64,000 nt of DNA, from the sequence record PP885688.1; one strand, 5' to 3'. The notes under the pieces were generated by a model. The model had not been told where the DNA came from. It was given only the letters and a program-made list of their open reading frames with translations, and did not search any database. The translations under genes and the position numbers were made by a program. Positions 3,997 through 40,543 of this stretch are shown piece by piece. Each line of letters opens with the position of its first letter. The stretch's first letter is position 1.

Positions 3997-4031
3997 AAAT
4001 TCATCTTTGGCTTTTCTTGGTCCGTAGGTTG
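3997..4031 (+). promoter_or_regulatory. Class II bipartite promoter motif
   Basis: AAATTCATCTTTG-N13-CGTAGGTTG, followed by an RBS and the ATG at 4051. Confidence 0.75.
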
Positions 4032-4050
4032 TAATTGAGGGACATTCAAC

Positions 4051-4404
4051 ATGAACGTGATCGAAACTATCCGCACCGCCACCGAGATTGCCCAGAACCT
4101 TATCAACACCTCCACCAGCCGCCAGTCGCCCAAAGACATCCTCGAAGACAACCGCGACTACTTCGAAAATCGCTTCGGTCAGCCCACGACCGACGTCGTA
4201 TTTCGCAAAGTAGCGACTCCCCTGACCCAGGTAACCTTCCTCGACGGCTCCGGCAAAGCCTACGAAACCGACATAGATACGCTTGCCCTGATGCAGCAGC
4301 TGCGTGCCGAAAATAACCTCTCAGGCGTCGAGATGATTCTCGATCTGGGTCTTGCGTTCGGTCGTATCAAAGCAGTAGTCTCTTCAACCAGCCTGTCTAA
4401 CTAA
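4051..4404 (+). CDS. Hypothetical protein (117 aa)
   Basis: GAGG RBS and class II motif upstream. Confidence 0.7.
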   Translation: MNVIETIRTATEIAQNLINTSTSRQSPKDILEDNRDYFENRFGQPTTDVVFRKVATPLTQVTFLDGSGKAYETDIDTLALMQQLRAENNLSGVEMILDLGLAFGRIKAVVSSTSLSN

Positions 4405-4460
4405 CTCTCCCCCATCACGAGCGGCCCGGCGCTATATCCGGCAAAGGAACGGGTGCACGC

Positions 4461-4694
4461 GTGAGAGCACGAGACCTCATAGGACGCAAGATCGTCGCCG
4501 TGGACTTCAGAGTCTTTCAGACCGGCATCGGACAGGGGAAAGCGGTAAACCCCATCCTCACACTCGACAATGGCCGCAAACTTTCCTTCGGTTGCTCGGA
4601 GGCGGTCCACACCCACGGCATCAACATGCAGCTCAGTGAGAAACCGAAGAAGGACAATGACGTTGGCTGCGCAATCGTCAAGAAAACCAAGTAG
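4461..4694 (+). CDS. Hypothetical protein (77 aa)
   Basis: ORF in the plus-strand island, GTG start. Confidence 0.55.
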   Translation: MRARDLIGRKIVAVDFRVFQTGIGQGKAVNPILTLDNGRKLSFGCSEAVHTHGINMQLSEKPKKDNDVGCAIVKKTK

Positions 4695-4695
4695 C

Positions 4696-4730
4696 AAAGT
4701 CATCTTTGGTCGGGTTCGGTCTGTAGGTTG
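4696..4730 (+). promoter_or_regulatory. Class II bipartite promoter motif
   Basis: AAAGTCATCTTTG-N13-TGTAGGTTG. Confidence 0.8.
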
Positions 4731-4747
4731 AGTAAGAGGACACAGCC

Positions 4748-5182
4748 ATGGGCACACGCTGCAAAGCAGAGATCGAGTTCAAACAGAAATACCCCTTCGC
4801 CCACACACGTGGTACTGGGCGCTACATCGCGGGCTACGAGATCGTCCAGGTCTTCTGCGGCGATTACCTTTGCTCCGAGGGCCTCACCGCCGCCCGTGCT
4901 TACAAGGTCGCGCTGGAACTGGAGAGTGAAGGTCTCATCAGCCCTGACCCCGATGAGCAGCGGATTGTTGATGAGTGCCCGGCAGTGTCTACGCCGGTTG
5001 AGGGCCTCTGCTGGAAGGTGAGGACGGTCTTCGATCGCGGCCCCCAGTCTCACTACCGCTATAGCGTGACCGGCGACATCCTCGACACCGACCGCACCCC
5101 TCGGCCCTTCAGCTGGGCCGTCCCCGACATCAGCAACCCGACGTATGATCTGTCGGAGGCACGTTATCTCAACGAAATCTAA
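4748..5182 (+). CDS. Hypothetical protein (144 aa)
   Basis: AGAGGA RBS and class II motif upstream. Confidence 0.7.
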   Translation: MGTRCKAEIEFKQKYPFAHTRGTGRYIAGYEIVQVFCGDYLCSEGLTAARAYKVALELESEGLISPDPDEQRIVDECPAVSTPVEGLCWKVRTVFDRGPQSHYRYSVTGDILDTDRTPRPFSWAVPDISNPTYDLSEARYLNEI

Positions 5183-5193
5183 ACATTCCAAAA

Positions 5194-5871: not shown

Positions 5872-5882
5872 TAAGAGGACGT

Positions 5883-6289: not shown

Positions 6290-6762
6290 TAGATACGTGC
6301 TCCTCGCACCCTGAGGGCCAGCATGACGTCCGCGTCCATCGGAGGATGGTTTCCCAGCACACAATCCACAAGCAGCTTGCGCAGCGGCTTAGGATCGTTC
6401 CCTTCGCGAATAGCATCGGCCACCACGCGCACGGCGATACCACGGGAGACCGTTGGGCCCATCGTCTTCACGAACGCGCCCCACACCCCTCCTATGTCGT
6501 TGTTGATGGCATTCACGCAGTCGTTGATGACTGGCGTCTCCAGCTTGTAAGAGAGACCCAGCGTCGTCGCAGTCCGCTCCATGGAGGAGAGATCCGGAAT
6601 GACCAGGGTGAACTCACGATTCGGATACCGGCGGAGGACGAGACGCTCGACCTTAGTGTTCGTCCAGGAGACGGTGACGGCTTCATTGCTGAGAGGCAGC
6701 AGAGGTTCCATCTCGATGATGCCGGGACCGCCGTAGTTCTTCTGGACCTTGAGAGTGATCAT
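6289..6762 (-). CDS. Hypothetical protein (157 aa)
   Basis: ATGA overlap with the BCS1-like gene. Confidence 0.7.
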   Translation of the reverse strand: MITLKVQKNYGGPGIIEMEPLLPLSNEAVTVSWTNTKVERLVLRRYPNREFTLVIPDLSSMERTATTLGLSYKLETPVINDCVNAINNDIGGVWGAFVKTMGPTVSRGIAVRVVADAIREGNDPKPLRKLLVDCVLGNHPPMDADVMLALRVRGARI

Positions 6763-7988
6763 GCCTTACCCCTGGAAGCCATAGCCTGCGCGTCGGCAAT
6801 CGTTGTCTGCTCGGGCAGGGAAGCGCGGAACTCCTCCCATGACTTCTGCGGGAAGTACTCGGAGACCTTGTCGTAGAACCGGCGGAGCTCTTCTTCGCGG
6901 GCGAAGTCGACCACGAACTTGCGATCGATCCGGCCTGAGCGAACCAGTGCGGCGTCGATCTTCTCGGGCTCGTTCGCCGTCATGAAGATGATCCGGTCCT
7001 CACTGGCACCGAGACCGTCGATCGCATTCAGCAGATCAGACATGGTGATGCGTGCGTCCGATTCGCTCTCACGCGTCTGGGCGGCGGCGATACAGTCGAT
7101 ATCCTCGAAGACGACGATGGATGGCTTGGAGCACTGGTTGAGCAACTGGGACAGGCGCTCTCCATCCATACCCGTCGCCTGTAATGCCACAACGTAGACC
7201 GGCAGTTTCAGATGGGACGCGAGAGCGAGGATCATCGTAGACTTGCCGGTGCCCGGAGGTCCGGAGAGCTGGTAGCCCTTGCGGTACGGGAAGCCAAGCG
7301 CAGCGTACGCGTCCTTGCTCGCGAGGAACTTTTTGATATCGGCAACGATCTCGTCAATCAGCTCCGGCGGATAGAACGTGGTGTCGAGCTTTCGCGGCGA
7401 TATGGGCGAAGGCTCCCAGTTGCCATAGAGGTATCTGTAGAGGTCGACGTGCGGCGGCATGTTGGCGAGATAGTCGGCCTGGGCCTCGGCGAGGATGTCC
7501 ATGATGATCTCCCGGCGACGCGTGAACCATACCTGGATCCGCAGCCAGTGCATCTTCTTCGTCGTACCGGCAGCAGCTCCGGCAGGTGTAGCTTCATCCG
7601 GCCAGTGGTCGATGATCATCGGCAGCTTGTGCTTCCAGCGCATGTAATAGGTGCCATACGCGGGGATCAGACTGTAGCCGGGGCTGGATCCTTTGTGCTT
7701 GCGCTGAGAGGGTGAGTCGTCGTTCCGTTCCTTATTGCGGCGGAGCAGAAGAGCGCTGATACCCCGCGTCTTGAGGTGCTTCTCGACCCAGTGGCTCACC
7801 CATGCGTAAGCCTCGGGGTCGTCGTTGTCTTCCACGGTGATCGTCAGGCTGACTTTGTTGATGGCCCAGCCGATGGTGTGCTTGTAGATGAAGTCCCAGG
7901 CAGATTTGAGGCCGCCCGTCACCACCCCGACGCCAAGAATGGCCCAGGGTGGCACGGACTTCAGGAAGGCGGGTGATGTCAGAGGCAT
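6759..7988 (-). CDS. BCS1-like AAA+ ATPase (N-terminal TM, BCS1_N-like domain, AAA)
   Basis: N-terminal hydrophobic segment; TITVEDNDDPEAYAWV; Y.ALGFPYRKGYQLSGPPGTGKS; VVFEDID; LLNAIDG; FMTAN; DAALVRSGRID. Confidence 0.85.
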   Translation of the reverse strand: MPLTSPAFLKSVPPWAILGVGVVTGGLKSAWDFIYKHTIGWAINKVSLTITVEDNDDPEAYAWVSHWVEKHLKTRGISALLLRRNKERNDDSPSQRKHKGSSPGYSLIPAYGTYYMRWKHKLPMIIDHWPDEATPAGAAAGTTKKMHWLRIQVWFTRRREIIMDILAEAQADYLANMPPHVDLYRYLYGNWEPSPISPRKLDTTFYPPELIDEIVADIKKFLASKDAYAALGFPYRKGYQLSGPPGTGKSTMILALASHLKLPVYVVALQATGMDGERLSQLLNQCSKPSIVVFEDIDCIAAAQTRESESDARITMSDLLNAIDGLGASEDRIIFMTANEPEKIDAALVRSGRIDRKFVVDFAREEELRRFYDKVSEYFPQKSWEEFRASLPEQTTIADAQAMASRGKA

Positions 7989-8004
7989 GGCTCAGCCTTT
8001 CTGG

Positions 8005-10198: not shown

Positions 10199-10214
10199 GA
10201 GAACCTCCACTCGC

Positions 10215-10250: not shown

Positions 10251-10252
10251 GC

Positions 10253-12262: not shown

Positions 12263-12298
12263 TAATACCCAAGCGACCCTCGTTTACCTGATTATTGA
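12263..12298 (-). promoter_or_regulatory. Class I promoter motif, leaderless geometry
   Basis: TCAATAATCAGG-N16-GGGTATTA, 6 nt before the GTG. Confidence 0.8.
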
Positions 12299-13709: not shown

Positions 13710-13745
13710 TAATACCCAAACGGAGGCCGCTTCCTGGATTATTAT
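13710..13745 (-). promoter_or_regulatory. Class I promoter motif, leaderless geometry
   Basis: ATAATAATCCAG-N16-GGGTATTA, 6 nt before the ATG. Confidence 0.8.
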
Positions 13746-14518: not shown

Positions 14519-15597
14519 GCAGCCTCCGACGCGCCGATTGTCACGCCAAACTTGATCTCCAGAGCACGACGCTGCTCCGGCGTACCGTCACGGAACTTCT
14601 TGATGCCACCGCCGCCCTTATGAGCCACGATCTTGGGGATATGCGCAAAGGTCGCGGGGTCCGTGCTGAGGCGAGACGACAACGCCGCATGTGTTTTCTG
14701 GAGGGTACTGATCATAGGCAACGCTCCACCGTTCGCCTCTGCTAGCTGCTCAGCCATATGGGCGGCCTCTTGCTTGGACATCAACAAAGTCTCACGGTTG
14801 ATGTGTGCGAAGGCCTCGGGGTGTTTGTTGATCTTGGTCGCAAGTGTTCTGTGCCCTAGCGTGGCCAGCTTTGAGAAGGGGGGCAGCTTCCCGTGTTCCT
14901 TGGCCAAGTCCTCAGCCATCTTGACATACTCGGGGAGTGACTTCTGAGCCGACTCCACTCGTTGTAGATGAGCGAAGAGATCTGGATAGGTGTTCATGCA
15001 GGCGATGAGCCCCGCCAGGCCTTTCGCCATGAGTGCTGAGTGGGCTGGGACGACACCGTTGTTCTCCCGTGCCAGCTCCTCGGCGACGGGGACCCACTCG
15101 GCCCGCTTCTTGAAGTGGCCTTGTGGCTTATCCTGCGGGATATGTTTGAAGGCGTCGGGGTGCTTCCGCATCATAGCGGACAGGCCGATGTAGTTGTTGG
15201 TCAGGAGCCACCGGTCAGAGGGTAGGTTGCCACCTTTCTCAGCCGCCAACTTCTCAGCTGAGAGAACGTGATCTTGATAGTTCAGGACCCGGACCCGATC
15301 CTGTTTAATGTGCGCGAACTCTTCTGGAAATTTACACATCCTCGACACCAGTGATGCATAGCCGTTCTTCTGGAGCCAACCGGAACCCTGGAGCAGGCCG
15401 CCGTTCTCTGCTGCCAACTGTTCGGCAACCTTGACCCACTTTTCCGTGGTCCGATTATTAGCCCGTGGAGCCCAGTCCCAATCGGGGTACCTGGTCTCTA
15501 CGACGGCGATCTGCTGCTTCGTGAGGTGGCCCGAATGGTAACGCACACGTAGGTGAGCGAAGTAGCTATGGAGTTGTTCTTTGGTAAGGGTTTCCAT
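14515..15597 (-). CDS. Repeat protein: helicase-associated-like N-motif plus 5 x ~55-aa repeats
   Basis: SGHLTKQQIAVVETRYPDWDW, five repeats, and a C-terminal FRDGTPEQRRALE motif shared with the paralog. Confidence 0.75.
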   Translation of the reverse strand: METLTKEQLHSYFAHLRVRYHSGHLTKQQIAVVETRYPDWDWAPRANNRTTEKWVKVAEQLAAENGGLLQGSGWLQKNGYASLVSRMCKFPEEFAHIKQDRVRVLNYQDHVLSAEKLAAEKGGNLPSDRWLLTNNYIGLSAMMRKHPDAFKHIPQDKPQGHFKKRAEWVPVAEELARENNGVVPAHSALMAKGLAGLIACMNTYPDLFAHLQRVESAQKSLPEYVKMAEDLAKEHGKLPPFSKLATLGHRTLATKINKHPEAFAHINRETLLMSKQEAAHMAEQLAEANGGALPMISTLQKTHAALSSRLSTDPATFAHIPKIVAHKGGGGIKKFRDGTPEQRRALEIKFGVTIGASEAA

Positions 15598-17656: not shown

Positions 17657-17684
17657 AAAGGCCCGCCGAAATACAGGCGGGCTT
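17657..17684 (-). terminator. Intrinsic terminator
   Basis: GCCCGCC/GGCGGGC stem followed by TTTC on the minus strand. Confidence 0.6.
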
Positions 17685-17951: not shown

Positions 17952-18575
17952 CTAGAACTCAATCTCCGGGATATCGGTGGTGGCGGAGACTGGCTCCGGG
18001 GAGGGTTTCGTCGCTACCGGCTGAATCTCTTCGTCCGGCGAGTTGAGGAGGATGGCTTCGAGCTTAGTGCAGCGTTGCTCGAACCAGAGGGCACGGGATT
18101 CATCACCCTGGAAGTAGGGAGAGGGGCTCTGGAGTAGGTCCTTCATTGTCTGGAGATACCCGGGCAGAGCCCCTTTCTTGATCGTCTGCTTGTACCGGTC
18201 GATGCGGCCCCGGGCAGATCTCTTGACGGCGTTGTACTTCTTCTCAGCGGCGCGGAGGCGGCTGATCTCGGCCTGCTCGGCAAAGGATGCGGCTACAGCC
18301 TTACTGTGGATCGTGAGGAACTGGAGCCCGGTGCTCAGCTTGATGTAGAGATCCGGATTCCAGCGCTCAAAGTGTGGCAGTGCAGCATCGGAGATGGTCA
18401 TACGGCCCTTGCCCGACTTAGGCTTGATGGTGAAGCAGATCCGGGTCGGCTGCTGAGTAACTACGCAGACTCTTTTGTTCTCTTCACCGGCGTCGTACAC
18501 CTGACCCATGAAGTCCCAGTTCTGAGGATCCTGACCTAGTCGGTTCGTGATTTCCGTACGTGAAAGAACTTCCAT
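17952..18575 (-). CDS. Hypothetical protein (207 aa), probably leaderless
   Basis: ATG 5 nt after a class II motif. Confidence 0.75.
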   Translation of the reverse strand: MEVLSRTEITNRLGQDPQNWDFMGQVYDAGEENKRVCVVTQQPTRICFTIKPKSGKGRMTISDAALPHFERWNPDLYIKLSTGLQFLTIHSKAVAASFAEQAEISRLRAAEKKYNAVKRSARGRIDRYKQTIKKGALPGYLQTMKDLLQSPSPYFQGDESRALWFEQRCTKLEAILLNSPDEEIQPVATKPSPEPVSATTDIPEIEF

Positions 18576-18580
18576 AACTA

Positions 18581-18615
18581 CAACCTACGGAGTGAAACAG
18601 CCCAAAGATGACTTT
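18581..18615 (-). promoter_or_regulatory. Class II promoter motif
   Basis: AAAGTCATCTTTG-N13-CGTAGGTTG. Confidence 0.8.
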
Positions 18616-18626
18616 GGGTGGAAAAT

Positions 18627-18932
18627 TTATGCGGCCTGCGCGGGCGTCCACCGCTCCATGAATCCGGCCAGTACAGAGGCCAGCGGCGTGTAGTCGGTCT
18701 CACGGAGCGAGTGGGCGATCCGCTCAAGCTGTGGCCGAGTGAAGCCCTGCAGTGCAGTCATGACCCGAGTAAACTCGATGATCGTGCCGTAGGACTCGAA
18801 CATGCAGGTACGCCCGCAGATCATCGACACAAAGCACTGTTCAGAGCTTAGGTAGTCGATGGAGTAGTCGTAGACAGCCCTTACGGAAGATTCGGAGTTG
18901 TCTAGTACGTCGCGCAGTTCTGGCGTCATCAT
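18627..18932 (-). CDS. Hypothetical protein (101 aa)
   Basis: GAGGG RBS and its own class II motif. Confidence 0.7.
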   Translation of the reverse strand: MMTPELRDVLDNSESSVRAVYDYSIDYLSSEQCFVSMICGRTCMFESYGTIIEFTRVMTALQGFTRPQLERIAHSLRETDYTPLASVLAGFMERWTPAQAA

Positions 18933-18951
18933 GTCTTTTATCCCTCGACCT

Positions 18952-18986
18952 CAACCTACAGAGTGAAACAACCCAAAGATGACTTT
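18952..18986 (-). promoter_or_regulatory. Class II promoter motif
   Basis: AAAGTCATCTTTG-N13-TGTAGGTTG; the spacer is nearly identical to the 18581 copy. Confidence 0.8.
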
Positions 18987-19013
18987 GGTACAAGGCTATT
19001 TAGCGTCCGAGGG

Positions 19014-19598: not shown

Positions 19599-19695
19599 CA
19601 GACTCTCTTTTCTTGGTACACCACACAATCGCCGCTTGTTTCAAGCCGAGGAGATCACTCCGCAACTTATCGGCTGTTGTGTGTGCCCATAAACT

Positions 19696-19730
19696 CAACC
19701 TACAAACCAAAAACCTCCAAAGATGACTTT
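19696..19730 (-). promoter_or_regulatory. Class II promoter motif
   Basis: AAAGTCATCTTTG-N13-TGTAGGTTG. Confidence 0.8.
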
Positions 19731-20320
19731 CAGGCGACGTTCGACGCCAAATATTCTGCCTGTCCGTCCAGCCACTTCAGCAACTGCTCCGCCCCGGGCT
19801 TCCGGACGTTCAGCTGCTTTCCGGTGAGTGCGTAGAGACCCTCCTCCAGCTCCCAGAAGTAGGGAAGCGGCAGCGTCTTGAGGATCTTCTTCTGGACCAG
19901 CACCAGCGCCCAGAGATAGGCGTAGAATCCATGCGCTGGCTTCGAGTTGATCAACCGGCGGCCTTCCCCGAAGCATGTCGTGTGCTCGAAGACGGCTTCG
20001 TTGGCGACAGCGTCCTGCAGCTCGTGCGCCATGTTGCCGACCGGCGCAGTACCGGCGTCACGGGATGCCATGCTGTGGAGCGTCAGTGACCCGTGGAGCG
20101 ACACTTCGACCTTGCCGATGTCATCACCCTTACCGGCCTGGATCATCTCCTCTGTGGTGCAGGGATTGCCTTCCCGGAATCGTTTGCGGACGAAGAGCTG
20201 CTCCCGCTGTACATGTCCCGGCAGCATCGCGAAGAGCTCCGCGTCGAGGACGGGATCGACAAAGCGTCCGGCCCACGGCAGGTAGTCGAAGGCGCTCTTT
20301 TTTGCTTTGACCTTATCCAT
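19730..20320 (-). CDS. Hypothetical protein (196 aa)
   Basis: Start MDKVKA overlapping the upstream stop. Confidence 0.65.
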   Translation of the reverse strand: MDKVKAKKSAFDYLPWAGRFVDPVLDAELFAMLPGHVQREQLFVRKRFREGNPCTTEEMIQAGKGDDIGKVEVSLHGSLTLHSMASRDAGTAPVGNMAHELQDAVANEAVFEHTTCFGEGRRLINSKPAHGFYAYLWALVLVQKKILKTLPLPYFWELEEGLYALTGKQLNVRKPGAEQLLKWLDGQAEYLASNVA

Positions 20321-27182: not shown

Positions 27183-27218
27183 TAATACCCATTCGCGGGG
27201 CCGGAAAGGGATTATCGC
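27183..27218 (-). promoter_or_regulatory. Class I promoter motif
   Basis: GCGATAATCCCT-N16-GGGTATTA. Confidence 0.7.
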
Positions 27219-29279: not shown

Positions 29280-29294
29280 CGTTCTCCTCTTCCT

Positions 29295-29329
29295 CAACCT
29301 ACAAAGCCGCTCGGTTCAAAGCTGACTTT
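29295..29329 (-). promoter_or_regulatory. Class II promoter motif
   Basis: AAAGTCAGCTTTG-N13-TGTAGGTTG. Confidence 0.75.
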
Positions 29330-29337
29330 TCGCGAAA

Positions 29338-29988
29338 TTACTTGGGACCTTCCCACTGGGTGCAGGCATGCTCCTGGAGCCGTCCGCCGGTGAACGAGCG
29401 CTGCTTGCGTGTACCGAAACACTTGGGGCAGTTGCTGTGGTCTGGGCGTGGCGGCTGGCCGTCTGAGGTGAGCTCGTGACGACGGTTCTGGATCGCACCG
29501 AAGACGTTCTGCCCGTGAGAGGAGAGCTCTTTCGGCTTCTCCGGGACCGGTAGCGCGAAGCGTTGCTTGATCTGCTCCTCCGTCAGCCGGACGCAGATCA
29601 TGCAGTGACCGTCGCCGTCGGTGTCGATACCAACTGGGCATCGTGGGCAGCCACGCGGGACGGGGGTCACCGGCGCGGCGATGAAGTGGATCAGCTGCTC
29701 GATCGTCATGGTGTCGACCTTGGCCTTGGCGAGTTGAGCCGTGTGATAAAGCTTCTTCGCGGCATCGGAGACCTGGATACCATCCTCGCGTCTGCCGGTT
29801 CCTCTGGGTTTGTCTTCCACGATATGTTTCCTCAAGTCAATTGGTGCTTGGAAGCGGCCACCGACTCGACCGCAACCTTCGCATGGTTTGCTGATATGGC
29901 TGAGACAGCCGGGGTGTTGACCGCACGCAACGCCGTCACGCAGGCGTGGTCGGGCAGGGTGCTCGGAAAGGCTATCGAACCGGCTCAT
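29338..29988 (-). CDS. Cys/His-rich hypothetical protein (216 aa)
   Basis: CGQHPGC..H...CEGC, CPRC...C..C and CPKC clusters. Confidence 0.6.
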   Translation of the reverse strand: MSRFDSLSEHPARPRLRDGVACGQHPGCLSHISKPCEGCGRVGGRFQAPIDLRKHIVEDKPRGTGRREDGIQVSDAAKKLYHTAQLAKAKVDTMTIEQLIHFIAAPVTPVPRGCPRCPVGIDTDGDGHCMICVRLTEEQIKQRFALPVPEKPKELSSHGQNVFGAIQNRRHELTSDGQPPRPDHSNCPKCFGTRKQRSFTGGRLQEHACTQWEGPK

Positions 29989-31138: not shown

Positions 31139-31174
31139 TAATACCCAAGAGGAGGGTCGGTCCCTAAATATCAA
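31139..31174 (-). promoter_or_regulatory. Class I promoter motif
   Basis: TTGATATTTAGG-N16-GGGTATTA. Confidence 0.8.
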
Positions 31175-31664: not shown

Positions 31665-31700
31665 TAATACCCAGTGGAGGACCCCGACCCTGATTACTAA
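31665..31700 (-). promoter_or_regulatory. Class I promoter motif
   Basis: TTAGTAATCAGG-N16-GGGTATTA. Confidence 0.75.
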
Positions 31701-31966
31701 AACGCTTCTTCGTTCTCGTAGATCAATTCGTAGATCCGATAGCGCTGTTCGGGGGATTTGTCCTTGGAGTCAGCCAGGTATTTCAGGTAGCGTTCAAAGC
31801 GCTCCAGCTCGACGCGGTCGCCTACCGAGATCTCTTTACCCGGTGCAGGCCGCATGTGCATTCCTGGGAAGGCGGTGAGCAGTACGCCGCAACCGGGGCA
31901 GTCCCCGTTGGGCTTGACGTACTGCATCAGCGTGCAGCGTTCGCAAAAGACGGGATTACTTGCCAT
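31697..31966 (-). CDS. Small zinc-ribbon hypothetical protein
   Basis: CERC...CPGC. Confidence 0.6.
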   Translation of the reverse strand: MASNPVFCERCTLMQYVKPNGDCPGCGVLLTAFPGMHMRPAPGKEISVGDRVELERFERYLKYLADSKDKSPEQRYRIYELIYENEEAF

Positions 31967-34900: not shown

Positions 34901-35258
34901 CGGCGACCTCAGCCTGCAGATCCCCTATGCGCTTCTGGATCTTCTCGACTTCGAGGCGGCGAACCTCCTCGTGATTGGGCTCCTCTGTGAACAGCCTGAG
35001 GAAGTCCTGAACGAGGAAGCGATGTTCCTTGTAGCGGGCCGTCGTTCGGCCACCATTTTCCATTGGCACCCAGATGGACCTGTCGTAAATCGCAGGGTGT
35101 GCGCGGAGCACGATCGTGTGGGCCTGCTTGTCGACGTCACGGATCGACTCCAGCAACAGGACGTCACCTTTGATGATCGGGGTCTGAGGAATCGTCTCAA
35201 GAGCACGCCAGTACTCGCCCTGCTTCAGCTCTACGAAATCGTCTTTCTCTGTGCGCAC
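31956..35258 (-). CDS. Large uncharacterised protein (1100 aa)
   Basis: Long ORF with strong codon bias, N-terminal coiled coil, and its own class II motif; no catalytic motif recognised. Confidence 0.85.
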   Translation of the reverse strand: MRTEKDDFVELKQGEYWRALETIPQTPIIKGDVLLLESIRDVDKQAHTIVLRAHPAIYDRSIWVPMENGGRTTARYKEHRFLVQDFLRLFTEEPNHEEVRRLEVEKIQKRIGDLQAEVAAGDAGSLDMKLHLADGTRKWEEKRKLEAGSSATIASTQMVALTPAITPKDIDDMKLSAEYKHEIATLKANWIKQKVEKISETVNSMVPFFQEKAAAALSRTEDVFRFVDKLQKSIQSLDLYVGTNVDVIQLKKGASAPADVPLTIMQGKLFADEELSVFLDVDEDFDHLGVPRFLKALADHPKLVDQLFASPRCIVAFAALRREKNYGDVWTNMHRNRENRRVGFLVRDGENLWQVNSPIDSHIKAHNLFPGKVELDNIFLKYRGAYSSFKLDDHNINFMDVEYTDRLEAHEAFSLHYKRFLILLAGLDHRLNLFGTFYNEEKTMDFISPEFQEKYFRFVHDDDGEFMLPLPDKQPLHAWIDEKNSYLRSGARVLCDWNDVMTLATAPGVIKNDSYSSRRDSYRVADPDEKISVAIARREGKDIIVSCPVTRRSYGAKDKKFEARVNLSLAKDRLSFLVLDAVTAEQMEFYIHSREVRLNHLSYMKFFKLAVKHLREEEVYEKEPRAMLRQALAEGGLATGQQAEDVIQQTVIAWRAANRGDHLPFRNILGELDQAKFTTLLNQMHVQLNAGSHKAAAEQYAKSIERTPLRLVVTGKSSMILYVAPTAEERDDRLAAHVWVNAIGLMRTKTGLKETTRRWTLLPELSASETTLHEWEIAKEWAGLGSKITFYEKQKMFDTVAGFEESYRTFLDNPSLSLAKWAARTRELSTGGYVRQPSLVFPIGVLRSKRGGEYHFITICHDYSHALLHNVTEDETLRKTIRDTVVGRYANKGHALSEFNKALVKTNNGWYLSTAKADAFKKGYLLNHLHRQGWLPVSMQDFNNSLETYLDRCIGEWAKEKSDDPSTYHVLGRTTPEMSINFDLFLGVDRRDRKFAVEWASMGDSFAPKKRFEQCLTIFPLDSEGQKIGSDSDWELLRDSNIKKGISSHSKGKFYTIEDAREYIQEGYEVEQSTEEGSFPPLSPDIERYWIKVPEEIDGK

Positions 35259-35338
35259 TCGTGATTCCTTTTCCGGTTCGATGATATGGGATCAGTGCCC
35301 CGGACTGCCGTGTTGGCCAGTCCGAGACCCTACTAACT

Positions 35339-35373
35339 CAACCTACAGACCAGAAGGGCCTAGGGATGAATTT
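35339..35373 (-). promoter_or_regulatory. Class II promoter motif (variant)
   Basis: AAATTCATCCCTA-N13-TGTAGGTTG. Confidence 0.65.
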
Positions 35374-36091
35374 GGATCCAAGTTTCTTGACCTTCGTCGT
35401 CAACCGGGGCCGTATTCTTGCAGGTGATGGTCACCGAGCGTGTTGGGCCGTTCTCACCCTCTGCGCCAAGCTTGGTGATCTGCGTCGCGTCGCACTCCCA
35501 TCCGGGCTGGTGTGTGATCAGCAGGTAGACCTCCTCGACCTTGTTCTGGTCGGTGAAGCCCTGAACCTCCACGGTACCCTGCGAGGACTTGAGGAAGGTG
35601 ACGTCGGGCTGCGTGATGTCCGCAGTGGGCCCGCCAAACCGGTCGAGAACAGCGTAGTGACTTGGGTTCGGGACTACCTCGCCAATGAGAGACATCTTCG
35701 GCCACGACATCTCGGACGATGGTGACTCGGTGATGTTGGCGGCACCGAACAGGTCGAAATTGAACTCCGTCTCATCGCACTCGTCATATTCCCGGGGGCA
35801 ATTGTGAACAGAGAAGTCAGGGTCCTTCTTCTTGAGGCCGGGCAGCTTCTTGGTGAGCGAAGCAGTCTCGAAGGTAAGCGAGTTGCTGAAGGGACCTGTG
35901 TATTCGAGGGCTTGGGGTGAAGGTGCTGTCGGTGGCGGAAGTACGAACTTCGTGGCGGAGTCTGCACTGATATGGACTTCGTTGCGGTGGTGAGGATGGG
36001 TGTTGCTGTAGGCCAGCCCAGCGGTCAACACGAAAGCGATCGCGCAGACAGAGAGCAGCCGGAAGTCGAGCTTGCCGGACGTAAATGACAT
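35360..36091 (-). CDS. Exported hypothetical protein
   Basis: Signal peptide LLSVCAIAFVLTAGLAYS followed by HPHHR and a Pro-rich linker. Confidence 0.7.
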   Translation of the reverse strand: MSFTSGKLDFRLLSVCAIAFVLTAGLAYSNTHPHHRNEVHISADSATKFVLPPPTAPSPQALEYTGPFSNSLTFETASLTKKLPGLKKKDPDFSVHNCPREYDECDETEFNFDLFGAANITESPSSEMSWPKMSLIGEVVPNPSHYAVLDRFGGPTADITQPDVTFLKSSQGTVEVQGFTDQNKVEEVYLLITHQPGWECDATQITKLGAEGENGPTRSVTITCKNTAPVDDEGQETWIQIHP

Positions 36092-36126
36092 CGTAAATCT
36101 CCTGTAGAGCAATCAGGTGGTTGTCC

Positions 36127-37025: not shown

Positions 37026-37028
37026 CTC

Positions 37029-37436: not shown

Positions 37437-37438
37437 AA

Positions 37439-37747: not shown

Positions 37748-38844
37748 GAGAAGTCCTCGTCGCTACCCTTGAACTTCGAGTTGATGACCTTCGTGTACAG
37801 AGGGAAGCCTTCGCTCGCACGACGTGGTGTCACCGGGGAAAGTACGCCGCCTTCGCTTACATGCAGGCTCTTGCCGGAGACGCGTTCCTTGCCCTTCACC
37901 TTCTCGAAGAGCTCTTCCGCGTTCTCAGGGTAGGCACCGGACCAGATCAGCGGCACCCAGTTGTCGCGGAACCAGCCGAACCCGCGAATGTGCGCGATTG
38001 TGTCGTAGGGTGTCTCTACGCCATCGATCAGCAGGCGGAAGACACGCAGCGTTGGCTCAGTCGCGCCATAGGTGAAGCCACCCTTCTGGCACGGGAAGAC
38101 CTCAGCGAATACCTGGACCTCAGCGCCTTTGAAAGGTTCGAGCGCCTTCAGCAGTCCGACGTTGAATACGGCCTTCCAGTAGAGAACCGACTCGCTCGGG
38201 TTGTTACCGTTCGCGACGTAGCAGTGGCCATCCTCGGTCGAAGACTTCGAGCTGACAACCGCTTCACCCTCGGAGGTGGCGTAGATCGAAACCTGGCTGC
38301 CGTGAACCTTCTCGAACAGGTTGACCTGCTCGCCAACGACAAACTCGCGTTGGTAGATGCGGAACTGCTCGACATCATGCTTCTTGGCGAAGCGCATGAA
38401 AGGGGCCTCGGTCAGTGTGCCGAGCAAACACTCCGGGATCGGTGCCTTGTACTTGGTGATGCCGAGGTGCTTCGACATGTCCCAGTTGTAGGGGAGATCG
38501 TCGGGATCGAGGAGCACGCCGCTATCTACCAGCTTCGCAAGAGCCCAGCTCAAGGGGATCGTCACACCTTCTGACAGCTCGCCACGCAGGCGCACGGACT
38601 TGACGCGATCGTGATTCTCACCGGCGAGGTAGCTGACGCCGGTCATGCTGTTCACGTAGTGAGGGCGGAGATCTTCGGGGAGAACAGAGCGCTCCGGCGC
38701 GAAGACGACGACGTCACCGTTCTTGTATCCGTTTTCCTTGGAGACGACGACCTGGAATGGGCCTACCTTACCGACTTCAAGCTTGTCGGTGGTTGGGTGA
38801 GGGAAGAGCTCGATCGGTGCTGCGACTACCTGCCACTGTGCCAT
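37744..38844 (-). CDS. RNA ligase, DRB0094/Rnl5 family (N-terminal OB domain plus nucleotidyltransferase)
   Basis: HPTTDKLEVG.V....VVV, V...RLRGELSEG, GITKY..PIP, FEKVHGS (motif I), FAEVF, FRL, SEGGV, KVIN. Confidence 0.85.
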   Translation of the reverse strand: MAQWQVVAAPIELFPHPTTDKLEVGKVGPFQVVVSKENGYKNGDVVVFAPERSVLPEDLRPHYVNSMTGVSYLAGENHDRVKSVRLRGELSEGVTIPLSWALAKLVDSGVLLDPDDLPYNWDMSKHLGITKYKAPIPECLLGTLTEAPFMRFAKKHDVEQFRIYQREFVVGEQVNLFEKVHGSQVSIYATSEGEAVVSSKSSTEDGHCYVANGNNPSESVLYWKAVFNVGLLKALEPFKGAEVQVFAEVFPCQKGGFTYGATEPTLRVFRLLIDGVETPYDTIAHIRGFGWFRDNWVPLIWSGAYPENAEELFEKVKGKERVSGKSLHVSEGGVLSPVTPRRASEGFPLYTKVINSKFKGSDEDFS

Positions 38845-38900
38845 GACTATCTCTCTTTGAAGTGGTTACAAAATGTAACGGGTTGAAATTTTATGTTGAG

Positions 38901-39155
38901 CTACCGGCCCGGCGAGCCAGCTATGTAGAAGCCTTCCTCTACGTTCTCTGCGTGGAACTCCTGCTCATCCACGCCGATGTGAATGGGCCGAAGTTCTCCG
39001 TGCTCAAGCCAGTACTTGATGAACTGGCTCATCGGTTTTTCTGCGTGATGGTCAAAGGACATCCGGGAAACGAGCAGTCCTTTGGAGTTGAGGAGGGACA
39101 GCTCGAAACGTTCCCTGACGTAGGCGACGGTGCAGGTGCCGGGGGTCCTTACCAT
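38901..39155 (-). CDS. Hypothetical protein (84 aa)
   Basis: Overlaps the upstream stop, GGGAGG RBS. Confidence 0.55.
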   Translation of the reverse strand: MVRTPGTCTVAYVRERFELSLLNSKGLLVSRMSFDHHAEKPMSQFIKYWLEHGELRPIHIGVDEQEFHAENVEEGFYIAGSPGR

Positions 39156-39925
39156 TTGCCCCTCCCGCGTTTCGTGACCCAGCTCGGTGGCTGGTAGCCT
39201 TTCGGCTTCGTTGGTTCAGTCCTGCGGCGTGGTTCGACGTAGGGAATGCTGTCGACCACCAGGTGCTCAGCGAGAGCGGCCTCGGCCTGGGCCTTCGTGA
39301 AAGCCTCTGCGATCTGCGCGTGCAGGTCCTTCTTACCGCCATTTAGGGCGAGCAGCTTCTCGCAGAGCGGCGAGGTGCAGCCGACTCTTACTTCGTGGGT
39401 CTCGGTATCCAGGCCTTCGCGCTTTGAGCCCTCGACGTAGTGCATGAACTGGCCGTAGTGAAAGTCAGGAGTGCCGATGACGAGGACCTTGATGTTGCCG
39501 CCTTTGCCGGTGAGCGGAGTAGCAACTACCTTCGTCTTCTCCTCAACCTGATCGACCTCGAAGATGTCTGGCAGAGGCTTGGCAAACGTGACGCCCATCG
39601 CCTCCGCTTTTGCCTTCGTGATATCCGGCGTGTTCTCGAAGTCGAAGTAGACGATCGGCGGCTGGTGCTCGCGGTTCAAGCGGCTCAGCGCCTGAAGGTG
39701 GATCATCGGTGTCCAGCGGTGAGTTCCGTACACTTCGTAGGTGTCTCCGACTTCGAATCCACCATGCGGTGGCAGATCGCTGATGCTGTCTGCTCCCGTC
39801 TTCAGAAAGTCCTTGCCGACCAAGCGAGGTGCCGCGTCGCGCATCATGTCCCACAGCGAGCGCATCGGCTTCTCTTCCTCTAGGATCTCGTGCTCGTTTG
39901 CAGAAATTTGGTTCAGTTCAGACAC
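39149..39925 (-). CDS. Hypothetical protein (258 aa)
   Basis: Codon-biased ORF in an operon. Confidence 0.65.
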   Translation of the reverse strand: MSELNQISANEHEILEEEKPMRSLWDMMRDAAPRLVGKDFLKTGADSISDLPPHGGFEVGDTYEVYGTHRWTPMIHLQALSRLNREHQPPIVYFDFENTPDITKAKAEAMGVTFAKPLPDIFEVDQVEEKTKVVATPLTGKGGNIKVLVIGTPDFHYGQFMHYVEGSKREGLDTETHEVRVGCTSPLCEKLLALNGGKKDLHAQIAEAFTKAQAEAALAEHLVVDSIPYVEPRRRTEPTKPKGYQPPSWVTKRGRGKW

Positions 39926-40205
39926 TTGCGTTCTCCGTGGTGGGTTGTGCAGCGTGGGTGTATGGGCTCCAGCCGAGGGGCATGGGAGCGTGAGTCAGTC
40001 CCTTGTCCTTGCGGGCCTCGAAGAACTTGGTGAGGCAGGGCATGCAGGTGCAGTAAGGGAAGCGGATGCCCTTGTAGCGCTTGAAAGATCCGCAGGGTTT
40101 CTCGTTGCGGAAGTCAGTGCGTATGAGGTACGCGGCCACCTTCTTGCTCTTACCCTTGGGCTCAGCGACGACGACATACTGCGGTTGATCAGGCATGCGC
40201 GACAC
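39918..40205 (-). CDS. Hypothetical basic Cys-containing protein
   Basis: CTCMPC motif; overlaps neighbours. Confidence 0.55.
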   Translation of the reverse strand: MSRMPDQPQYVVVAEPKGKSKKVAAYLIRTDFRNEKPCGSFKRYKGIRFPYCTCMPCLTKFFEARKDKGLTHAPMPLGWSPYTHAAQPTTENASV

Positions 40206-40488
40206 CTCGCTGTAGCGTTATGGTGGACTTGAGGATGTGGCCGAGGCGTGACATCTCGCCGCCGCGTCCGCCGATGAAGAGCTCCCCTTCGCCAAGGTGG
40301 AGTGTTGAGGGAGCGTGGCTCGGGTAGTTCTCCAGCAGACGCTGCTCAGCCTCCGAGTAGTCCTGGCTGATGATGTTCAGCTTGGCCTTGATGTTGTAGG
40401 GACCATTTGATAAGAACGTCTGGAGAGCGTGTGCCTGCCGTCTCCGTCTGTAGCTTCGTTGTGTCCGTACCTTGAATTGGTGCGACAT
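40189..40488 (-). CDS. Hypothetical basic protein (99 aa)
   Basis: GAGAGG RBS after a class II-like motif. Confidence 0.6.
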   Translation of the reverse strand: MSHQFKVRTQRSYRRRRQAHALQTFLSNGPYNIKAKLNIISQDYSEAEQRLLENYPSHAPSTLHLGEGELFIGGRGGEMSRLGHILKSTITLQRGVAHA

Positions 40489-40508
40489 GCGAATTGCGTC
40501 CTCTCTTG

Positions 40509-40543
40509 CAACCTACAAACCTGATCGGGCCTGAGATCTCTCC
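40509..40543 (-). promoter_or_regulatory. Class II promoter motif (degenerate upstream box)
   Basis: GGAGAGATCTCAG-N13-TGTAGGTTG. Confidence 0.45.

What the first reader, a model, noticed from the sequence alone, without database searches (positions are those of the whole stretch)
3997..40543. Second, unrelated promoter class AAAGTCATCTTTG-N13-YGTAGGTTG heading single-gene cassettes
Eight copies with a fixed 13-nt spacer: 3997+, 4696+, 18581-, 18952-, 19696-, 29295-, 35339-, and a degenerate one at 40509-. They flip with gene orientation and mostly sit before orphan genes, including the 1100-aa gene. Three occur in tandem over 1.1 kb at 18.6-19.7 kb. This resembles the promoter-plus-gene cassette arrays of phage early or host-takeover regions and implies a two-regulon temporal programme alongside class I. 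Near-identical copies could also act as recombination points for gene shuffling.
Basis: partly seen in the sequence, partly recalled or inferred. Interest (0 to 1): 0.75.

Follow-up and report, generated by a model that had tools for sequence, protein, structure and literature searches.

The report
Phage-specific promoter class in Tunturi 5
The repeated 35-base motif is very probably a phage-specific promoter used 36 times in the jumbo acidobacterial phage Tunturi 5; it fires a fixed six bases downstream, often directly onto the start codon, and it does not look like the host's normal promoters, so what reads it is still unknown.

Summary
The window is bases 62,001-126,000 of Tunturiibacter phage Tunturi_5, a 309-kb jumbo phage of an Acidobacteriota host.

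- **Observation holds.** Six copies match AAAGTCATCTTTG-N13-YGTAGGTTG with at most one mismatch, against 0 expected. Two more (35339-, 40509-) keep mainly the downstream half.
- **Genome-wide.** There are 36 copies, all with identical spacing, all between genes or over the last few codons of the upstream gene, and all pointing at the downstream gene.
- **Architecture.** The conserved block is about 50 bp: an A/T tract at -55..-47, a box AAAKTCATCTTT at -40..-29, TYTG-TAGGTT-GA at -16..-5, and a purine at +1 in 36/36.
- **Start site.** In 12 sites an ATG sits exactly at the predicted +1, and 11 of these are annotated CDS starts (leaderless mRNAs). In 18 others a GAGG-type ribosome-binding site begins at +1 or +2.
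- **Not host-type.** Phage Tunturi_3, which infects the same host species, carries about 20-30 canonical TTGACA-N17-TATAGT promoters. Tunturi_5 has none above background.
- **Three classes.** Tunturi_5 has class I (TGGGTATTA), this class II, and a late class III (GACTAC-N11-TAGGAG), plus an ECF-type sigma gene (gp211) and an annotated sigma gene (gp3).
"Single-gene cassettes" holds for only 2 of the 8 window sites. The 1100-aa gene is not an orphan.
- **Limits.** No transcript data and no close relatives could be found, so the reading factor and the timing are inferred.

The parts
3982..4037 (+). Class II promoter before gp83 (unit gp83-gp84). The 35-mer is at 3997-4031, the A/T tract at 3982-3990, and the predicted +1 at 4037, where GAGGG begins. 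The ATG is at 4051.
4681..4736 (+). Class II promoter before gp85 (unit gp85-gp87). The 35-mer is at 4696-4730 (0 mismatches) and the predicted +1 at 4736 (GAGGA). The ATG is at 4748.
18575..18630 (-). Class II promoter before gp102 (unit gp102-gp101). The 35-mer is at 18581-18615. The predicted +1 at 18575 is the A of the annotated gp102 ATG, so the mRNA is leaderless.
18946..19001 (-). Class II promoter before gp103 (single-gene unit). The 35-mer is at 18952-18986, the predicted +1 at 18946 (GAGGG), and the ATG at 18932. Its CCAAAGTCATCTTTGG box was also scored as a terminator-like hairpin.
19690..19745 (-). Class II promoter before gp104. The 35-mer is at 19696-19730. The predicted +1 at 19690 is the A of an ATG that opens only a 7-codon ORF. 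This short ORF copies the 5' end of gp62. The annotated gp104 starts at 19586.
29289..29344 (-). Class II promoter before gp122 (unit gp122-gp118). The 35-mer is at 29295-29329 (1 mismatch, AAAGTCAGCTTTG), the predicted +1 at 29289 (GAGGA), and the ATG at 29279.
35333..35388 (-). Degenerate class II copy before the 1100-aa gp128. The -18..-5 block is intact and the upstream box reads AAATTCATCCCTA. The predicted +1 is at 35333, about 75 nt upstream of the annotated GTG at 35258, and the leader contains a hairpin.
40503..40558 (-). Half copy before gp138 (about ten genes follow without another recognised promoter). The block GGTTTGTAGGTTG is intact. The upstream box is replaced by a G+C-rich hairpin (GGGGCCTGGGAGAGATCTCAGGCCC, -22 kcal/mol). 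The predicted +1 is at 40503 (GAGGA) and the ATG at 40488.
17661..17682 (-). Intrinsic-terminator-like hairpin (7 G-C pairs plus a T-rich tail) that closes the gp102-gp101 unit.
15222..15229 (+). GTAGGTTG alone inside the gp99 coding sequence, with no upstream box. A chance occurrence, not part of the class.

Best explanation
These are transcription promoters of one phage-specific class, used 36 times in the Tunturi_5 genome and 8 times in this window.

**How it most likely works**
- The bacterial core RNA polymerase, guided by a sigma-70-family factor, melts the DNA at TAGGTT (-12..-7).
- Transcription starts at the purine six bases after the final G of GTAGGTTG.
- In a third of the sites, that first base is the A of the start codon, giving leaderless mRNAs.
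- In half of the sites, the transcript begins at or next to a GAGG ribosome-binding site, giving leaders of about 9-20 nt.
- The A/T tract at -55..-47 probably acts as an UP element.

**What reads the upstream box**
The invariant box TCATCTTT (-36..-29) sits inside the near-palindrome CCAAAG-TCAT-CTTTGG, where a -35 element should be, but it bears no resemblance to the host's TTGACA. I therefore infer that it is read by a specificity factor supplied by the phage. There are two candidates:
- a phage sigma, either the ECF-type gp211 or the annotated sigma gp3;
- an adaptor that works with host sigma-A bound to TAGGTT, in the manner of T4 MotA/AsiA or lambda cII.

**Timing**
The class drives non-structural genes, mostly of unknown function. 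It is probably the earliest of the three promoter classes.

**Shown versus inferred**
- Shown: the motif, its geometry, its position relative to genes, and the absence of host-type promoters.
- Inferred: the start site, the polymerase, the reading factor and the timing.
For: - **Number and placement.** 36 sites genome-wide with one invariant spacing. All lie between annotated genes or over the last 13-27 nt of the upstream gene, and all are co-oriented with the downstream gene. The block carries about 44 bits of information over -42..-5.
- **Start codon at +1.** ATG sits exactly 5 nt after GTAGGTTG in 12 of 36 sites, with none at 4 or 6 nt (P about 1e-14). Eleven of these are the depositors' own CDS starts: gp11, 41, 46, 61, 62, 102, 188, 202, 226, 266 and 318.
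- **Ribosome-binding site at +1.** Eighteen further sites have a GAGG-type site beginning at +1 or +2, with the ATG 14-21 nt after the motif.
- **Start-site nucleotides.** +1 is A or G in 36/36 and -1 is T or A in 32/36.
- **Host geometry matches.** In phage Tunturi_3 (same host species, no sigma or polymerase annotated), leaderless genes sit 6 nt after the TAnnnT of canonical TTGACA-N17-TATAGT promoters. Predicted leaderless genes preceded by TANNNT make up 9.7-19.4% of genes in three Acidobacteria genomes (PMC3160421).
- **No host-type promoters in Tunturi_5.** Zero exact TTGACA-N16-18-TAnnnT. One PWM hit at 14 bits or more, against 4 in the reversed-sequence control and 29 in Tunturi_3.
- **Phage sigma genes.** gp211 has Sigma70_r2 and r4_2 domains and passes the NCBIfam ECF model. 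It lies downstream of a class II site at record position 154289. gp3 is annotated as a sigma factor.
- **Three classes, sorted by gene type.** Class III precedes virion genes. Class I precedes replication, nucleotide-metabolism and tRNA genes. Class II precedes none of the structural genes.
Against: - There are no transcript data: no sequencing run could be listed, so the start site and the timing are inferred from sequence alone.
- The factor that reads the -35 box is not identified.
- gp3 has no Pfam, PHROG or PDB sequence match, and it could not be sent to the remote tools.
- The box lacks the AAC core typical of ECF -35 elements.
- If class II is the entry class and needs a phage factor, that factor must be delivered with the DNA. 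No virion-borne sigma or adaptor is known here.
- The gp211 operon is preceded by all three classes, so the cascade argument is weak.
- TG lies directly against TAGGTT, one base closer than the host's TGn extended -10 seen in Tunturi_3.
- No related genome carries the motif, so conservation cannot be used as evidence.
Confidence: 0.6

Rival explanations
1. Host sigma-A holoenzyme alone reads these promoters, through TAGGTT, the adjacent TG and the upstream A/T tract. The near-palindromic box CCAAAG-TCAT-CTTTGG, centred at -34.5, is then not a -35 element. It is the operator of a dimeric phage regulator that switches the whole class off or on at a set time. Candidates are the MarR-family gp72, gp235 and gp306.
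For: - TAGGTT fits TAnnnT with the same 6-nt distance to +1 as the host-type promoters of Tunturi_3.
- The box arms are a perfect 6-bp inverted repeat in the consensus, 10 bp centre to centre.
- Regulators of suitable type are annotated in the genome.
- This model solves the entry problem without needing a virion-borne factor.
Against: - The asymmetric centre TCAT and the right arm are nearly invariant, while the left arm is looser: position -37 is G/T 18:18, and C-42 and C-41 occur in only 20 and 24 of 36 sites. That pattern suggests asymmetric reading.
- GG at -10/-9 and G at -13 and -6 are invariant. A housekeeping sigma would not require this, and the host consensus is TATAGT.
- TG is displaced by one base from the host's TGn position.
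Confidence: 0.2
2. The motif is primarily a recombination module, like the promoter-early stem-loop (PeSL) elements of T4-type phages. On this view the repeated promoter-plus-hairpin sequences are there because they mediate gain, loss and shuffling of small accessory genes. This does not exclude promoter function.
For: - The sites cluster next to small genes with no known family.
- Half copies exist at 35339- and 40509-, recalling the degraded '1/2 PeSLs' described in PMC4122927.
- The promoter plus the first 21 nt of gp62 is duplicated upstream of gp104, leaving a 7-codon ORF.
- The box is itself a small stem-loop, scored as terminator-like at 18973-18988.
Against: - Apart from that one pair, the flanks of the 36 sites share no similarity beyond the roughly 55-bp block.
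- Only 7 of 36 sites have a terminator-like hairpin upstream.
- No pair of related genomes exists to show indels bounded by the motif.
- Recombination alone would not lock ATG or the ribosome-binding site to one position, nor keep +1 a purine.
Confidence: 0.12
3. The motif is the promoter of an unrecognised phage-encoded RNA polymerase, virion-borne or early-made, rather than of the host enzyme. This would explain why the genome needs no host-type promoters.
For: - Tunturi_5 has no host-type promoters.
- More than half of its ORFs have no predicted function (PMC11924767).
- Jumbo phages of the phiKZ and AR9 type work this way (PMC5449584, listed).
Against: - No RNA polymerase subunit is annotated among the 350 ORFs, although the annotation used structure-based tools.
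- The motif has the bipartite -35/-10 geometry, the TAnnnT element and the 6-nt start distance of bacterial sigma-dependent promoters.
- The phage carries sigma-factor genes, which make sense only with the host core enzyme.
Confidence: 0.05
4. The motif acts in RNA rather than DNA, as a 5'-UTR translation signal, a processing site or a terminator. For example, AGGU of GTAGGTTG would serve as a Shine-Dalgarno sequence 7 nt before the ATG.
For: - AGGT is complementary to part of the anti-Shine-Dalgarno sequence.
- The box can fold as a 6-bp hairpin followed by T-rich sequence.
Against: - The ATG distance is exactly 5 nt in all 12 cases, with none at 4 or 6, whereas Shine-Dalgarno spacing is tolerant.
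- The other 18 sites carry their own strong GAGG site downstream.
- Conservation extends 50 nt upstream with an UP-like A/T tract.
- No Rfam family matches the window.
- Hairpin energies are mostly weak, about -4 to -10 kcal/mol.
Confidence: 0.03

Closest known systems
T4 early and middle promoters (early: strong sigma-70 promoters with UP-like tracts; middle: MotA box plus sigma-70 -10, 'sigma appropriation')
   Same: - Dozens of near-identical promoters, often in tandem, before small accessory genes.
- A TAnnnT -10 kept while a conserved box occupies the -35 region (as in middle promoters).
- A/T tracts upstream.
- The phage also encodes large ART-domain polyvalent proteins, which recalls T4's packaged ADP-ribosyltransferase Alt (from my own knowledge).
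   Different: - The box sequence differs and is centred near -34.5, not -30.
- No MotA or AsiA homologue is annotated.
- T4 has host-type early promoters that express MotA and AsiA first; Tunturi_5 has no host-type class.
- Many class II sites give leaderless mRNAs.
Promoters read by phage-encoded sigma factors (SPO1 gp28 and gp33/34; phiEco32 gp36 with consensus AATGTA at -11.5, PMC12276001)
   Same: - Host core enzyme redirected to phage-specific consensus sequences.
- Several temporal classes.
- The phage carries a divergent or ECF-like sigma gene (gp211).
   Different: - In those phages the early class is host-type, whereas here none is.
- The sigma-to-class assignment is unknown.
- The -10 here still satisfies the housekeeping TAnnnT rule.
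PeSL / PmSL elements of T4-type phages (PMC2839356, PMC4122927)
   Same: - Conserved promoter copies next to ORFans.
- Degraded half copies.
- One promoter-plus-5'-end duplication.
- A small stem-loop forms part of the element.
   Different: - PeSL promoters are sigma-70-like (TTGACA or TTTACW ... TATAAT).
- The PeSL stem-loop is a separate terminator upstream of the promoter. Here the hairpin is the -35 box itself, and true terminators are rare (7/36).
- Shuffling is untestable because there are no relatives.
Lambda cII-dependent promoters (PRE, PI, PaQ)
   Same: - Weak or absent -35 hexamer.
- A repeat pair about 10 bp apart straddles the -35 position and is bound by a phage activator, while host sigma uses the -10 (from my own knowledge).
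   Different: - cII sites are direct repeats (TTGC-N6-TTGC), whereas this is an inverted repeat with an invariant asymmetric centre.
- No cII-like gene has been identified here.
Leaderless-mRNA promoters of high-G+C bacteria (Actinobacteria, Deinococcus, Acidobacteria; PMC3160421)
   Same: - TAnnnT about 12 nt before the start codon, with +1 being the A of ATG.
- The same geometry appears in Tunturi_3 host-type promoters.
   Different: - Those are ordinary host promoters of low information content.
- Here the whole 50-bp block is nearly invariant and the -35 box is foreign.

Membership tests
Host housekeeping (sigma-A / sigma-70 type) promoter | -10 hexamer TAnnnT about 6-7 nt upstream of the start site | tested here: met
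   TAGGTT in 32 of 36 sites and CAGGTT in 4. ATG sits exactly 6 nt after the hexamer in 12 sites, and +1 is a purine in 36/36. The start site itself is inferred.
Host housekeeping (sigma-A / sigma-70 type) promoter | -35 hexamer resembling TTGACA, 16-18 bp upstream of the -10 | tested here: not met
   That position reads CATCTT or TCATCT. The host consensus, derived from phage Tunturi_3 of the same host species, is gcTTGACA-N17-(TGn)TATAGT. Class II sites score below threshold with that model.
Host housekeeping (sigma-A / sigma-70 type) promoter | Experimentally mapped start site and dependence on sigma-A holoenzyme | not testable with these tools
   No sequencing run was listed for this DNA.
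T4-type middle promoter (sigma appropriation by MotA/AsiA) | Housekeeping-type -10 combined with a conserved activator box replacing the -35 | tested here: inconclusive
   A conserved box exists (AAAKTCATCTTT at -40..-29). Its sequence and centre (-34.5) differ from the MotA box, (a/t)3TGCTTtA centred at -30, which I cite from memory.
T4-type middle promoter (sigma appropriation by MotA/AsiA) | Host-type early promoters that first express the activator and co-activator | tested here: not met
   Tunturi_5 has no TTGACA-type promoters above background.
T4-type middle promoter (sigma appropriation by MotA/AsiA) | MotA- and AsiA-like proteins encoded by the phage | not tested
   None is annotated. 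Proteins outside the window could not be sent to the remote search tools.
ECF-sigma-dependent promoter | An ECF sigma available in the system | tested here: met
   gp211 has Sigma70_r2 and r4_2 domains, hits PHROG 1740, and scores 62.5 bits on NCBIfam TIGR02937 against a cut-off of 42.9.
ECF-sigma-dependent promoter | -35 element with an AAC core and -10 element with a CGT core, separated by a rigid spacer | tested here: inconclusive
   The spacer is rigid. YGTA at -14..-11 resembles CGTA. There is no AAC in the box; GTCATC is only loosely like the GTCACA-type -35 elements I recall from memory.
ECF-sigma-dependent promoter | The sigma's own operon is preceded by its cognate promoter (autoregulation) | tested here: inconclusive
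   A class II site lies at record position 154289, upstream of gp214-gp211. A class III site (153689) and a class I site (153218) also lie in the same operon.
PeSL (promoter-early stem-loop) shuffling cassette | Composite terminator stem-loop plus early promoter | tested here: inconclusive
   Terminator-like hairpins lie upstream of only 7 of 36 sites. The -35 box itself is a 6-bp-arm hairpin.
PeSL (promoter-early stem-loop) shuffling cassette | Gene gain or loss between close relatives bounded by the element | not testable with these tools
   No related genome was found: the DNA pattern scans returned only chance-like single matches with no class II context, and the protein-based searches returned no relative or only distant ones without the motif. 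The source paper calls Tunturi 5 a singleton.
Promoter-gene-terminator 'moron' or single-gene cassette | One gene flanked by its own promoter and terminator | tested here: not met
   The window units hold 2, 3, 1, 1, 2, 5, 2 and about 10 genes. Only one unit ends in a clear terminator, at 17661-17682.
Phage RNA-polymerase promoter (T7-, N4-, phiKZ/AR9-type) | A phage-encoded RNA polymerase and a contiguous consensus at or overlapping the start site (or a hairpin promoter) | tested here: not met
   No polymerase is annotated among the 350 ORFs. The motif is bipartite with sigma-type geometry. Absence of a divergent polymerase is not proven.

The most novel reading that the evidence does not exclude
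Tunturi_5 may bypass normal host promoter recognition entirely. It has no TTGACA-type promoter anywhere in 309 kb, so its first transcription would have to come from class II sites read with the help of a factor that enters with the DNA. That factor could be a packaged sigma or adaptor, or RNA polymerase modified by the ART-domain polyvalent proteins. It would recognise the TCATCTTT box while host sigma-A, or the factor itself, opens TAGGTT. If so, this would be a way for a polymerase-less jumbo phage to start infection that has not yet been described, and the first transcription system described for any Acidobacteriota virus.
Probability: 0.15. Interest if true: 0.8.

Novelty: new member of a known kind. 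Interest (0 to 1): 0.55.

Why it matters
- **A first transcription map for this group.** Tunturi_5 comes from the first set of phages cultured on Acidobacteriota, a dominant but genetically intractable soil phylum. The describing paper says nothing about its transcription.
- **Immediate experiments.** Three sequence-defined promoter classes, precise predicted start sites and many leaderless genes make it clear what to do next and which genes to watch.
- **Practical parts.** It supplies compact promoter parts of about 55 bp that could serve as tools for Acidobacteria.
- **A sharp open question.** The absence of host-type promoters in a phage with no recognisable polymerase leaves open what starts the infection.
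- **Context.** The general phenomenon, phage-specific promoter classes read through phage sigma factors or adaptors, is well known.

Tried and rejected
- **Exact-pattern scans of public collections.**
  - IMG/VR gave 1 hit and JGI metagenomes gave 65 single hits.
  - GTDB genomes gave 1 hit, in a Ferruginibacter MAG.
  - None shows the AAAK prefix, the spacer features or a second copy, so they are chance matches.
- **Relatives by protein.**
  - gp90 matched only distant giant-virus-MAG-type contigs without the motif.
  - gp82 and gp128 found nothing in IMG/VR.
  - The best GenBank phage match to helicase gp94 is 30% identical (LR745208), and that region has no shared motif.
- **gp128 homologue contigs.** Contigs carrying gp128 homologues (L159, L160) have no class II motif.
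- **RNA evidence.** No sequencing run was listed.
- **gp3 (annotated sigma).** No Pfam, PHROG or PDB sequence hit.
- **Class III regex.** A hand-written pattern was no better than the reversed-sequence control (8 versus 12 hits). A Gibbs sampler then recovered the motif; the first sampler run timed out.
- **Greedy ORF map.** It swallowed promoter regions by extending ORFs to the longest start, so gene context was read from the GenBank annotation instead.
- **Alternatives considered and rejected.**
  - A known RNA family: no Rfam hit.
  - tRNA-linked elements: no tRNA in the window.
  - A larger mobile repeat: the flanks are unrelated.
  - Bacteroidota-type -33/-7 promoters: TTTG to TA is 15 nt here, against about 19 (from memory).

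Full report
**Identity of the sequence.** The window is 100% identical to bases 62,001-126,000 of Tunturiibacter phage Tunturi_5 (PP885688.1). This is a 308,711-bp jumbo myovirus isolated on the acidobacterium Tunturiibacter psychrotolerans X4BP1 from Finnish tundra soil. I fetched the whole record with its annotation. The paper that describes the phage does not mention promoters, sigma factors or transcription, and calls Tunturi 5 a singleton in gene-sharing networks (PMC11924767).

**Checking the observation.**
- The 35-mer AAAGTCATCTTTG-N13-YGTAGGTTG occurs six times in the window with at most one mismatch, at the stated coordinates and strands. None is expected by chance.
- The copies at 35339- and 40509- have an exact GTAGGTTG and the conserved bases just upstream of it, but a degenerate upstream box.
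- A ninth GTAGGTTG at 15222+ lies inside a coding sequence, lacks the box, and is a chance hit.
- In the whole genome there are 36 sites: 32 with GTAGGTTG and 4 with GCAGGTTG.
- A scan that allowed the two halves to sit 12-19 nt apart gave 36 hits at the class II spacing, 34 of them real sites, and only weak, chance-like matches at every other spacing.

**Anatomy of the motif.** Numbering assumes TAGGTT occupies -12..-7.

| Position | Feature |
|---|---|
| -55..-47 | A/T-rich tract, AAnAATnTT-like |
| -43..-41 | C-rich |
| -40..-29 | AAAKTCATCTTT; T-36, C-35, A-34, T-33, C-32 and T-31 are present in 34-36 of 36 sites |
| -27 | G |
| -22..-20 | T-rich |
| -18/-17 | G then G/C |
| -16..-13 | T, Y, T, G |
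| -12..-7 | TAGGTT |
| -6, -5 | G, A |
| +1 | purine in 36/36 |

- The information content over -42..-5 is about 44 bits.
- The box is the core of a near-palindrome, CCAAAG-TCAT-CTTTGG. The right arm and the asymmetric centre are far better conserved than the left arm.
- Outside the roughly 55-bp block, the flanks of different sites are unrelated. The block is therefore not part of a larger repeat.

**Relation to genes.**
- By the depositors' annotation, every one of the 36 sites lies between genes or over the last 13-27 nt of the upstream gene, and every one points at the gene immediately downstream.
- In 12 of 36 sites an ATG lies exactly 5 nt after GTAGGTTG, with none at 4 or 6 nt. The chance probability is about 1e-14.
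- Eleven of those ATGs are the annotated start codons of gp11, 41, 46, 61, 62, 102, 188, 202, 226, 266 and 318. With TAGGTT as the -10 hexamer, the A of the ATG is the canonical +1, so these are leaderless mRNAs.
- In 18 other sites a GAGG-type ribosome-binding site begins at +1 or +2 and the ATG follows 14-21 nt after the motif.
- Tolerant Shine-Dalgarno spacing cannot explain this locking of two different translation signals to one position. A fixed transcription start can.

**Host control.**
- Phage Tunturi_3 infects the same host species and has no annotated sigma or polymerase.
- It carries 20-30 textbook promoters, gcTTGACA-N17-(TGn)TATAGT. Several sit 6 nt before an ATG or GTG that opens a long ORF.
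- The host sigma-A therefore recognises the canonical consensus and initiates leaderless mRNAs with the same geometry as class II.
- This agrees with a published prediction that 9.7-19.4% of genes in three Acidobacteria genomes are leaderless behind TANNNT (PMC3160421).
- Tunturi_5 has no exact TTGACA-N16-18-TAnnnT. With a Tunturi_3-trained two-block model it gives one hit at 14 bits or more. Its own reversed sequence gives 4 and Tunturi_3 gives 29; the model was trained on Tunturi_3, so only the Tunturi_5 versus control comparison is independent.
- Class II keeps a housekeeping-type -10 (T-12, A-11, T-7), but at the -35 position it carries a box unrelated to TTGACA.

**Other promoter classes and sigma genes.**

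| Class | Consensus | Copies | Genes it heads |
|---|---|---|---|
| I | GATAATYC, about 18 nt, then TGGGTATTA | 40 exact cores genome-wide, 9 in the window (0.07 expected) | Replication, nucleotide-metabolism, tRNA and a few virion genes, also often leaderless |
| II | This finding | 36 genome-wide, 8 in the window | Non-structural genes, mostly unknown |
| III | GACTAC, about 11 nt, then TAGGAG / TAGGGG / TAGAAG | At least 16 of 31 upstream regions of structural genes | Structural genes (seen by eye, recovered by a Gibbs sampler) |

- gp211 is an ECF-type sigma.
- gp3 is annotated as a sigma but has no sequence-level support, and I could not examine it further.
- No RNA polymerase is annotated.
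- gp3 lies behind a class I site only. The gp211 operon contains one site of each class.
- Class II heads only non-structural genes: small proteins of unknown function, a DNA methyltransferase, a peptide deformylase, a DNA ligase, a PAPS reductase, and RecT next to a GmrSD-like protein.

**Most likely mechanism.**
- *Class II sites are promoters for the bacterial core enzyme, starting at the predicted +1.* I hold this with about 0.9 confidence.
- *The -35 box is read by something other than unmodified host sigma-A region 4.* This follows from the host control, from the invariance of the box, and from the invariance of bases a housekeeping sigma does not demand (G-13, G-10, G-9, G-6).
  - phage sigma gp211;
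  - phage sigma gp3;
  - an adaptor acting with host sigma-A, in the manner of T4 MotA/AsiA or lambda cII.
- *Order of the classes.* A cascade in which class II runs first, then gp211 activates class I, then gp3 activates class III is coherent. In it, class II is the entry class because it alone has a sigma-A-like -10.
- *Weaknesses of the cascade.* It is weakened by the three-class promoter set in the gp211 operon. It also leaves the question of how the box is read at time zero.
- *Main rival (0.2).* Host sigma-A suffices, and the palindromic box is an operator for a phage regulator.
- *Overall.* Confidence in the stated explanation as a whole is 0.6.

- *'Single-gene cassettes' is only partly right.* From annotation and motif positions, the eight window units hold 2 (gp83-84), 3 (gp85-87), 1 (gp104), 1 (gp103), 2 (gp102-101, closed by a terminator-like hairpin at 17661-17682), 5 (gp122-118), 2 (gp128-127) and about 10 genes (gp138-129). 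Terminator-like hairpins precede only 7 of 36 sites.
- *'Orphan' is fair for most.* Nine of ten downstream proteins have no family. gp128 belongs to a large uncharacterised family found in Burkholderia, Ralstonia, Agrobacterium plasmids and many metagenomes.
- *The recombination idea has one concrete trace.* The promoter and the first 21 nt of gp62 (20 of 21 identical) recur upstream of gp104, where they open a 7-codon ORF. The half copies at 35339- and 40509- recall the degraded PeSLs of T4-type phages (PMC4122927). No related genome is available to test shuffling.

**Comparison with known systems, and novelty.**
- The closest analogues are T4 early and middle promoters, promoters of phage-encoded sigma factors (SPO1; phiEco32 gp36, PMC12276001), PeSL elements, and leaderless promoters of high-G+C bacteria.
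- Class II fails the membership test for a host housekeeping promoter because the -35 is not met.
- It fails the T4 middle test because there are no host-type early promoters.
- It fails the single-gene cassette test.
- It is inconclusive for ECF-type and PeSL.
- I file it as a new member of the known kind 'phage-specific promoter class'.
- The less ordinary point is the complete lack of host-type promoters in a phage without a recognisable polymerase.

**What is missing.**
- There are no transcript data: no run was listed.
- There are no relatives carrying the motif.
- gp3 could not be classified.
- The start site, the timing and the factor remain inferences from sequence.

Noticed in passing
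window 753-761, 12263-12271, 13710-13718, 27183-27191, 31139-31147, 31665-31673, 41210-41218, 54681-54689, 60870-60878 (all - strand): Class I promoter cores TGGGTATTA: 9 in the window against 0.07 expected, and 40 in the genome. Each has a GATAATYC box about 18 nt upstream and a C-rich GCCCTCC-like spacer. In a subset, the spacer pairs with the downstream Shine-Dalgarno region or the first codons, with stems of 8 bp or more in 8/40 against 2.4% of random positions. Sometimes a T-run follows, so the -10 sits in the loop of a terminator-like hairpin. Read-through transcripts might have their ribosome-binding site masked, while transcripts started at the promoter would not. Many class I genes are also leaderless.
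   Followed up: partly
window 1430-1461 (- strand), before gp79; elsewhere upstream of structural genes (e.g. record 276395+, 194350-, 298450+): A third, late promoter-like class: GACTAC, about 11 nt, then TAGGAG/TAGGGG/TAGAAG. It was found upstream of at least 16 of 31 virion genes by Gibbs sampling. A simple regex for it was not specific.
   Followed up: partly
whole Tunturi_5 record (L001-L008) versus Tunturi_3 (L076, L077): Tunturi_5 has no canonical TTGACA-N17-TATAAT promoters above background: 1 hit at 14 bits or more, against 4 in the reversed control. Tunturi_3, on the same host species, has 20-30 of them, several driving leaderless genes.
   Followed up: yes
window 31956-35258 (- strand), gp128: The 1100-aa protein has no Pfam or PHROG domain. 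It has more than 370 full-length homologues (36-46% identity) in bacterial chromosomes, plasmids and metagenomes. On one 82-kb phage-like contig (L159) it sits in similar company, with small genes and an NAD-dependent DNA ligase downstream. Its function is unknown.
   Followed up: partly
window 19667-19690 (- strand) and L003 4790-4812: A 7-codon ORF (MGTHNSR*) directly at the predicted +1 of the 19696- promoter. It is a copy of the first codons of gp62 (PAPS reductase), with 20 of 21 nt identical, and is a footprint of a promoter-associated duplication.
   Followed up: yes
L005 8409-12197 (-), L006 20802-25271 (+), L007 6501-10589 (+): Three proteins of 1260-1490 aa annotated 'MutT/NUDIX hydrolase' are polyvalent proteins. 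Each has an ART-PolyVal ADP-ribosyltransferase domain plus GNAT, SprT-like, 2'-5' RNA ligase or deoxyribosyltransferase domains. They are candidates for injected host-modifying proteins.
   Followed up: partly
window 41210-41219 (- strand), start of gp139: The annotated start codon of gp139 overlaps the class I core TGGGTATTA, so the start is probably mis-called and lies further downstream.
   Followed up: no
window about 43380-43790 and 46640-48890; also L002 2442-3240: Unusually long stretches without annotated genes (0.4-0.8 kb) in regions of lower G+C. The few weak host-like promoter matches in the genome fall here, for example TTGACG-N16-TACACT at window 42698+ and TTGACG-N18-TAACTT at 47692-. 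They could hold non-coding RNAs, an origin, or the true entry promoters.
   Followed up: no
L160 677-890: Seven tandem iterons (GCATAAGAACTGAC-like, 22-56 bp apart) on the metagenomic contig that encodes the closest gp128 homologue. This looks like a replication origin and is unrelated to the class II motif.
   Followed up: no
window 6759-7988 (- strand), gp90: gp90 is annotated 'major head protein', but its detectable relatives in IMG/VR are on giant-virus-MAG-type contigs and match only residues about 190-400 at 25-35% identity. The genome has a second 'major head protein' (gp334), so the gp90 annotation may be wrong.
   Followed up: no
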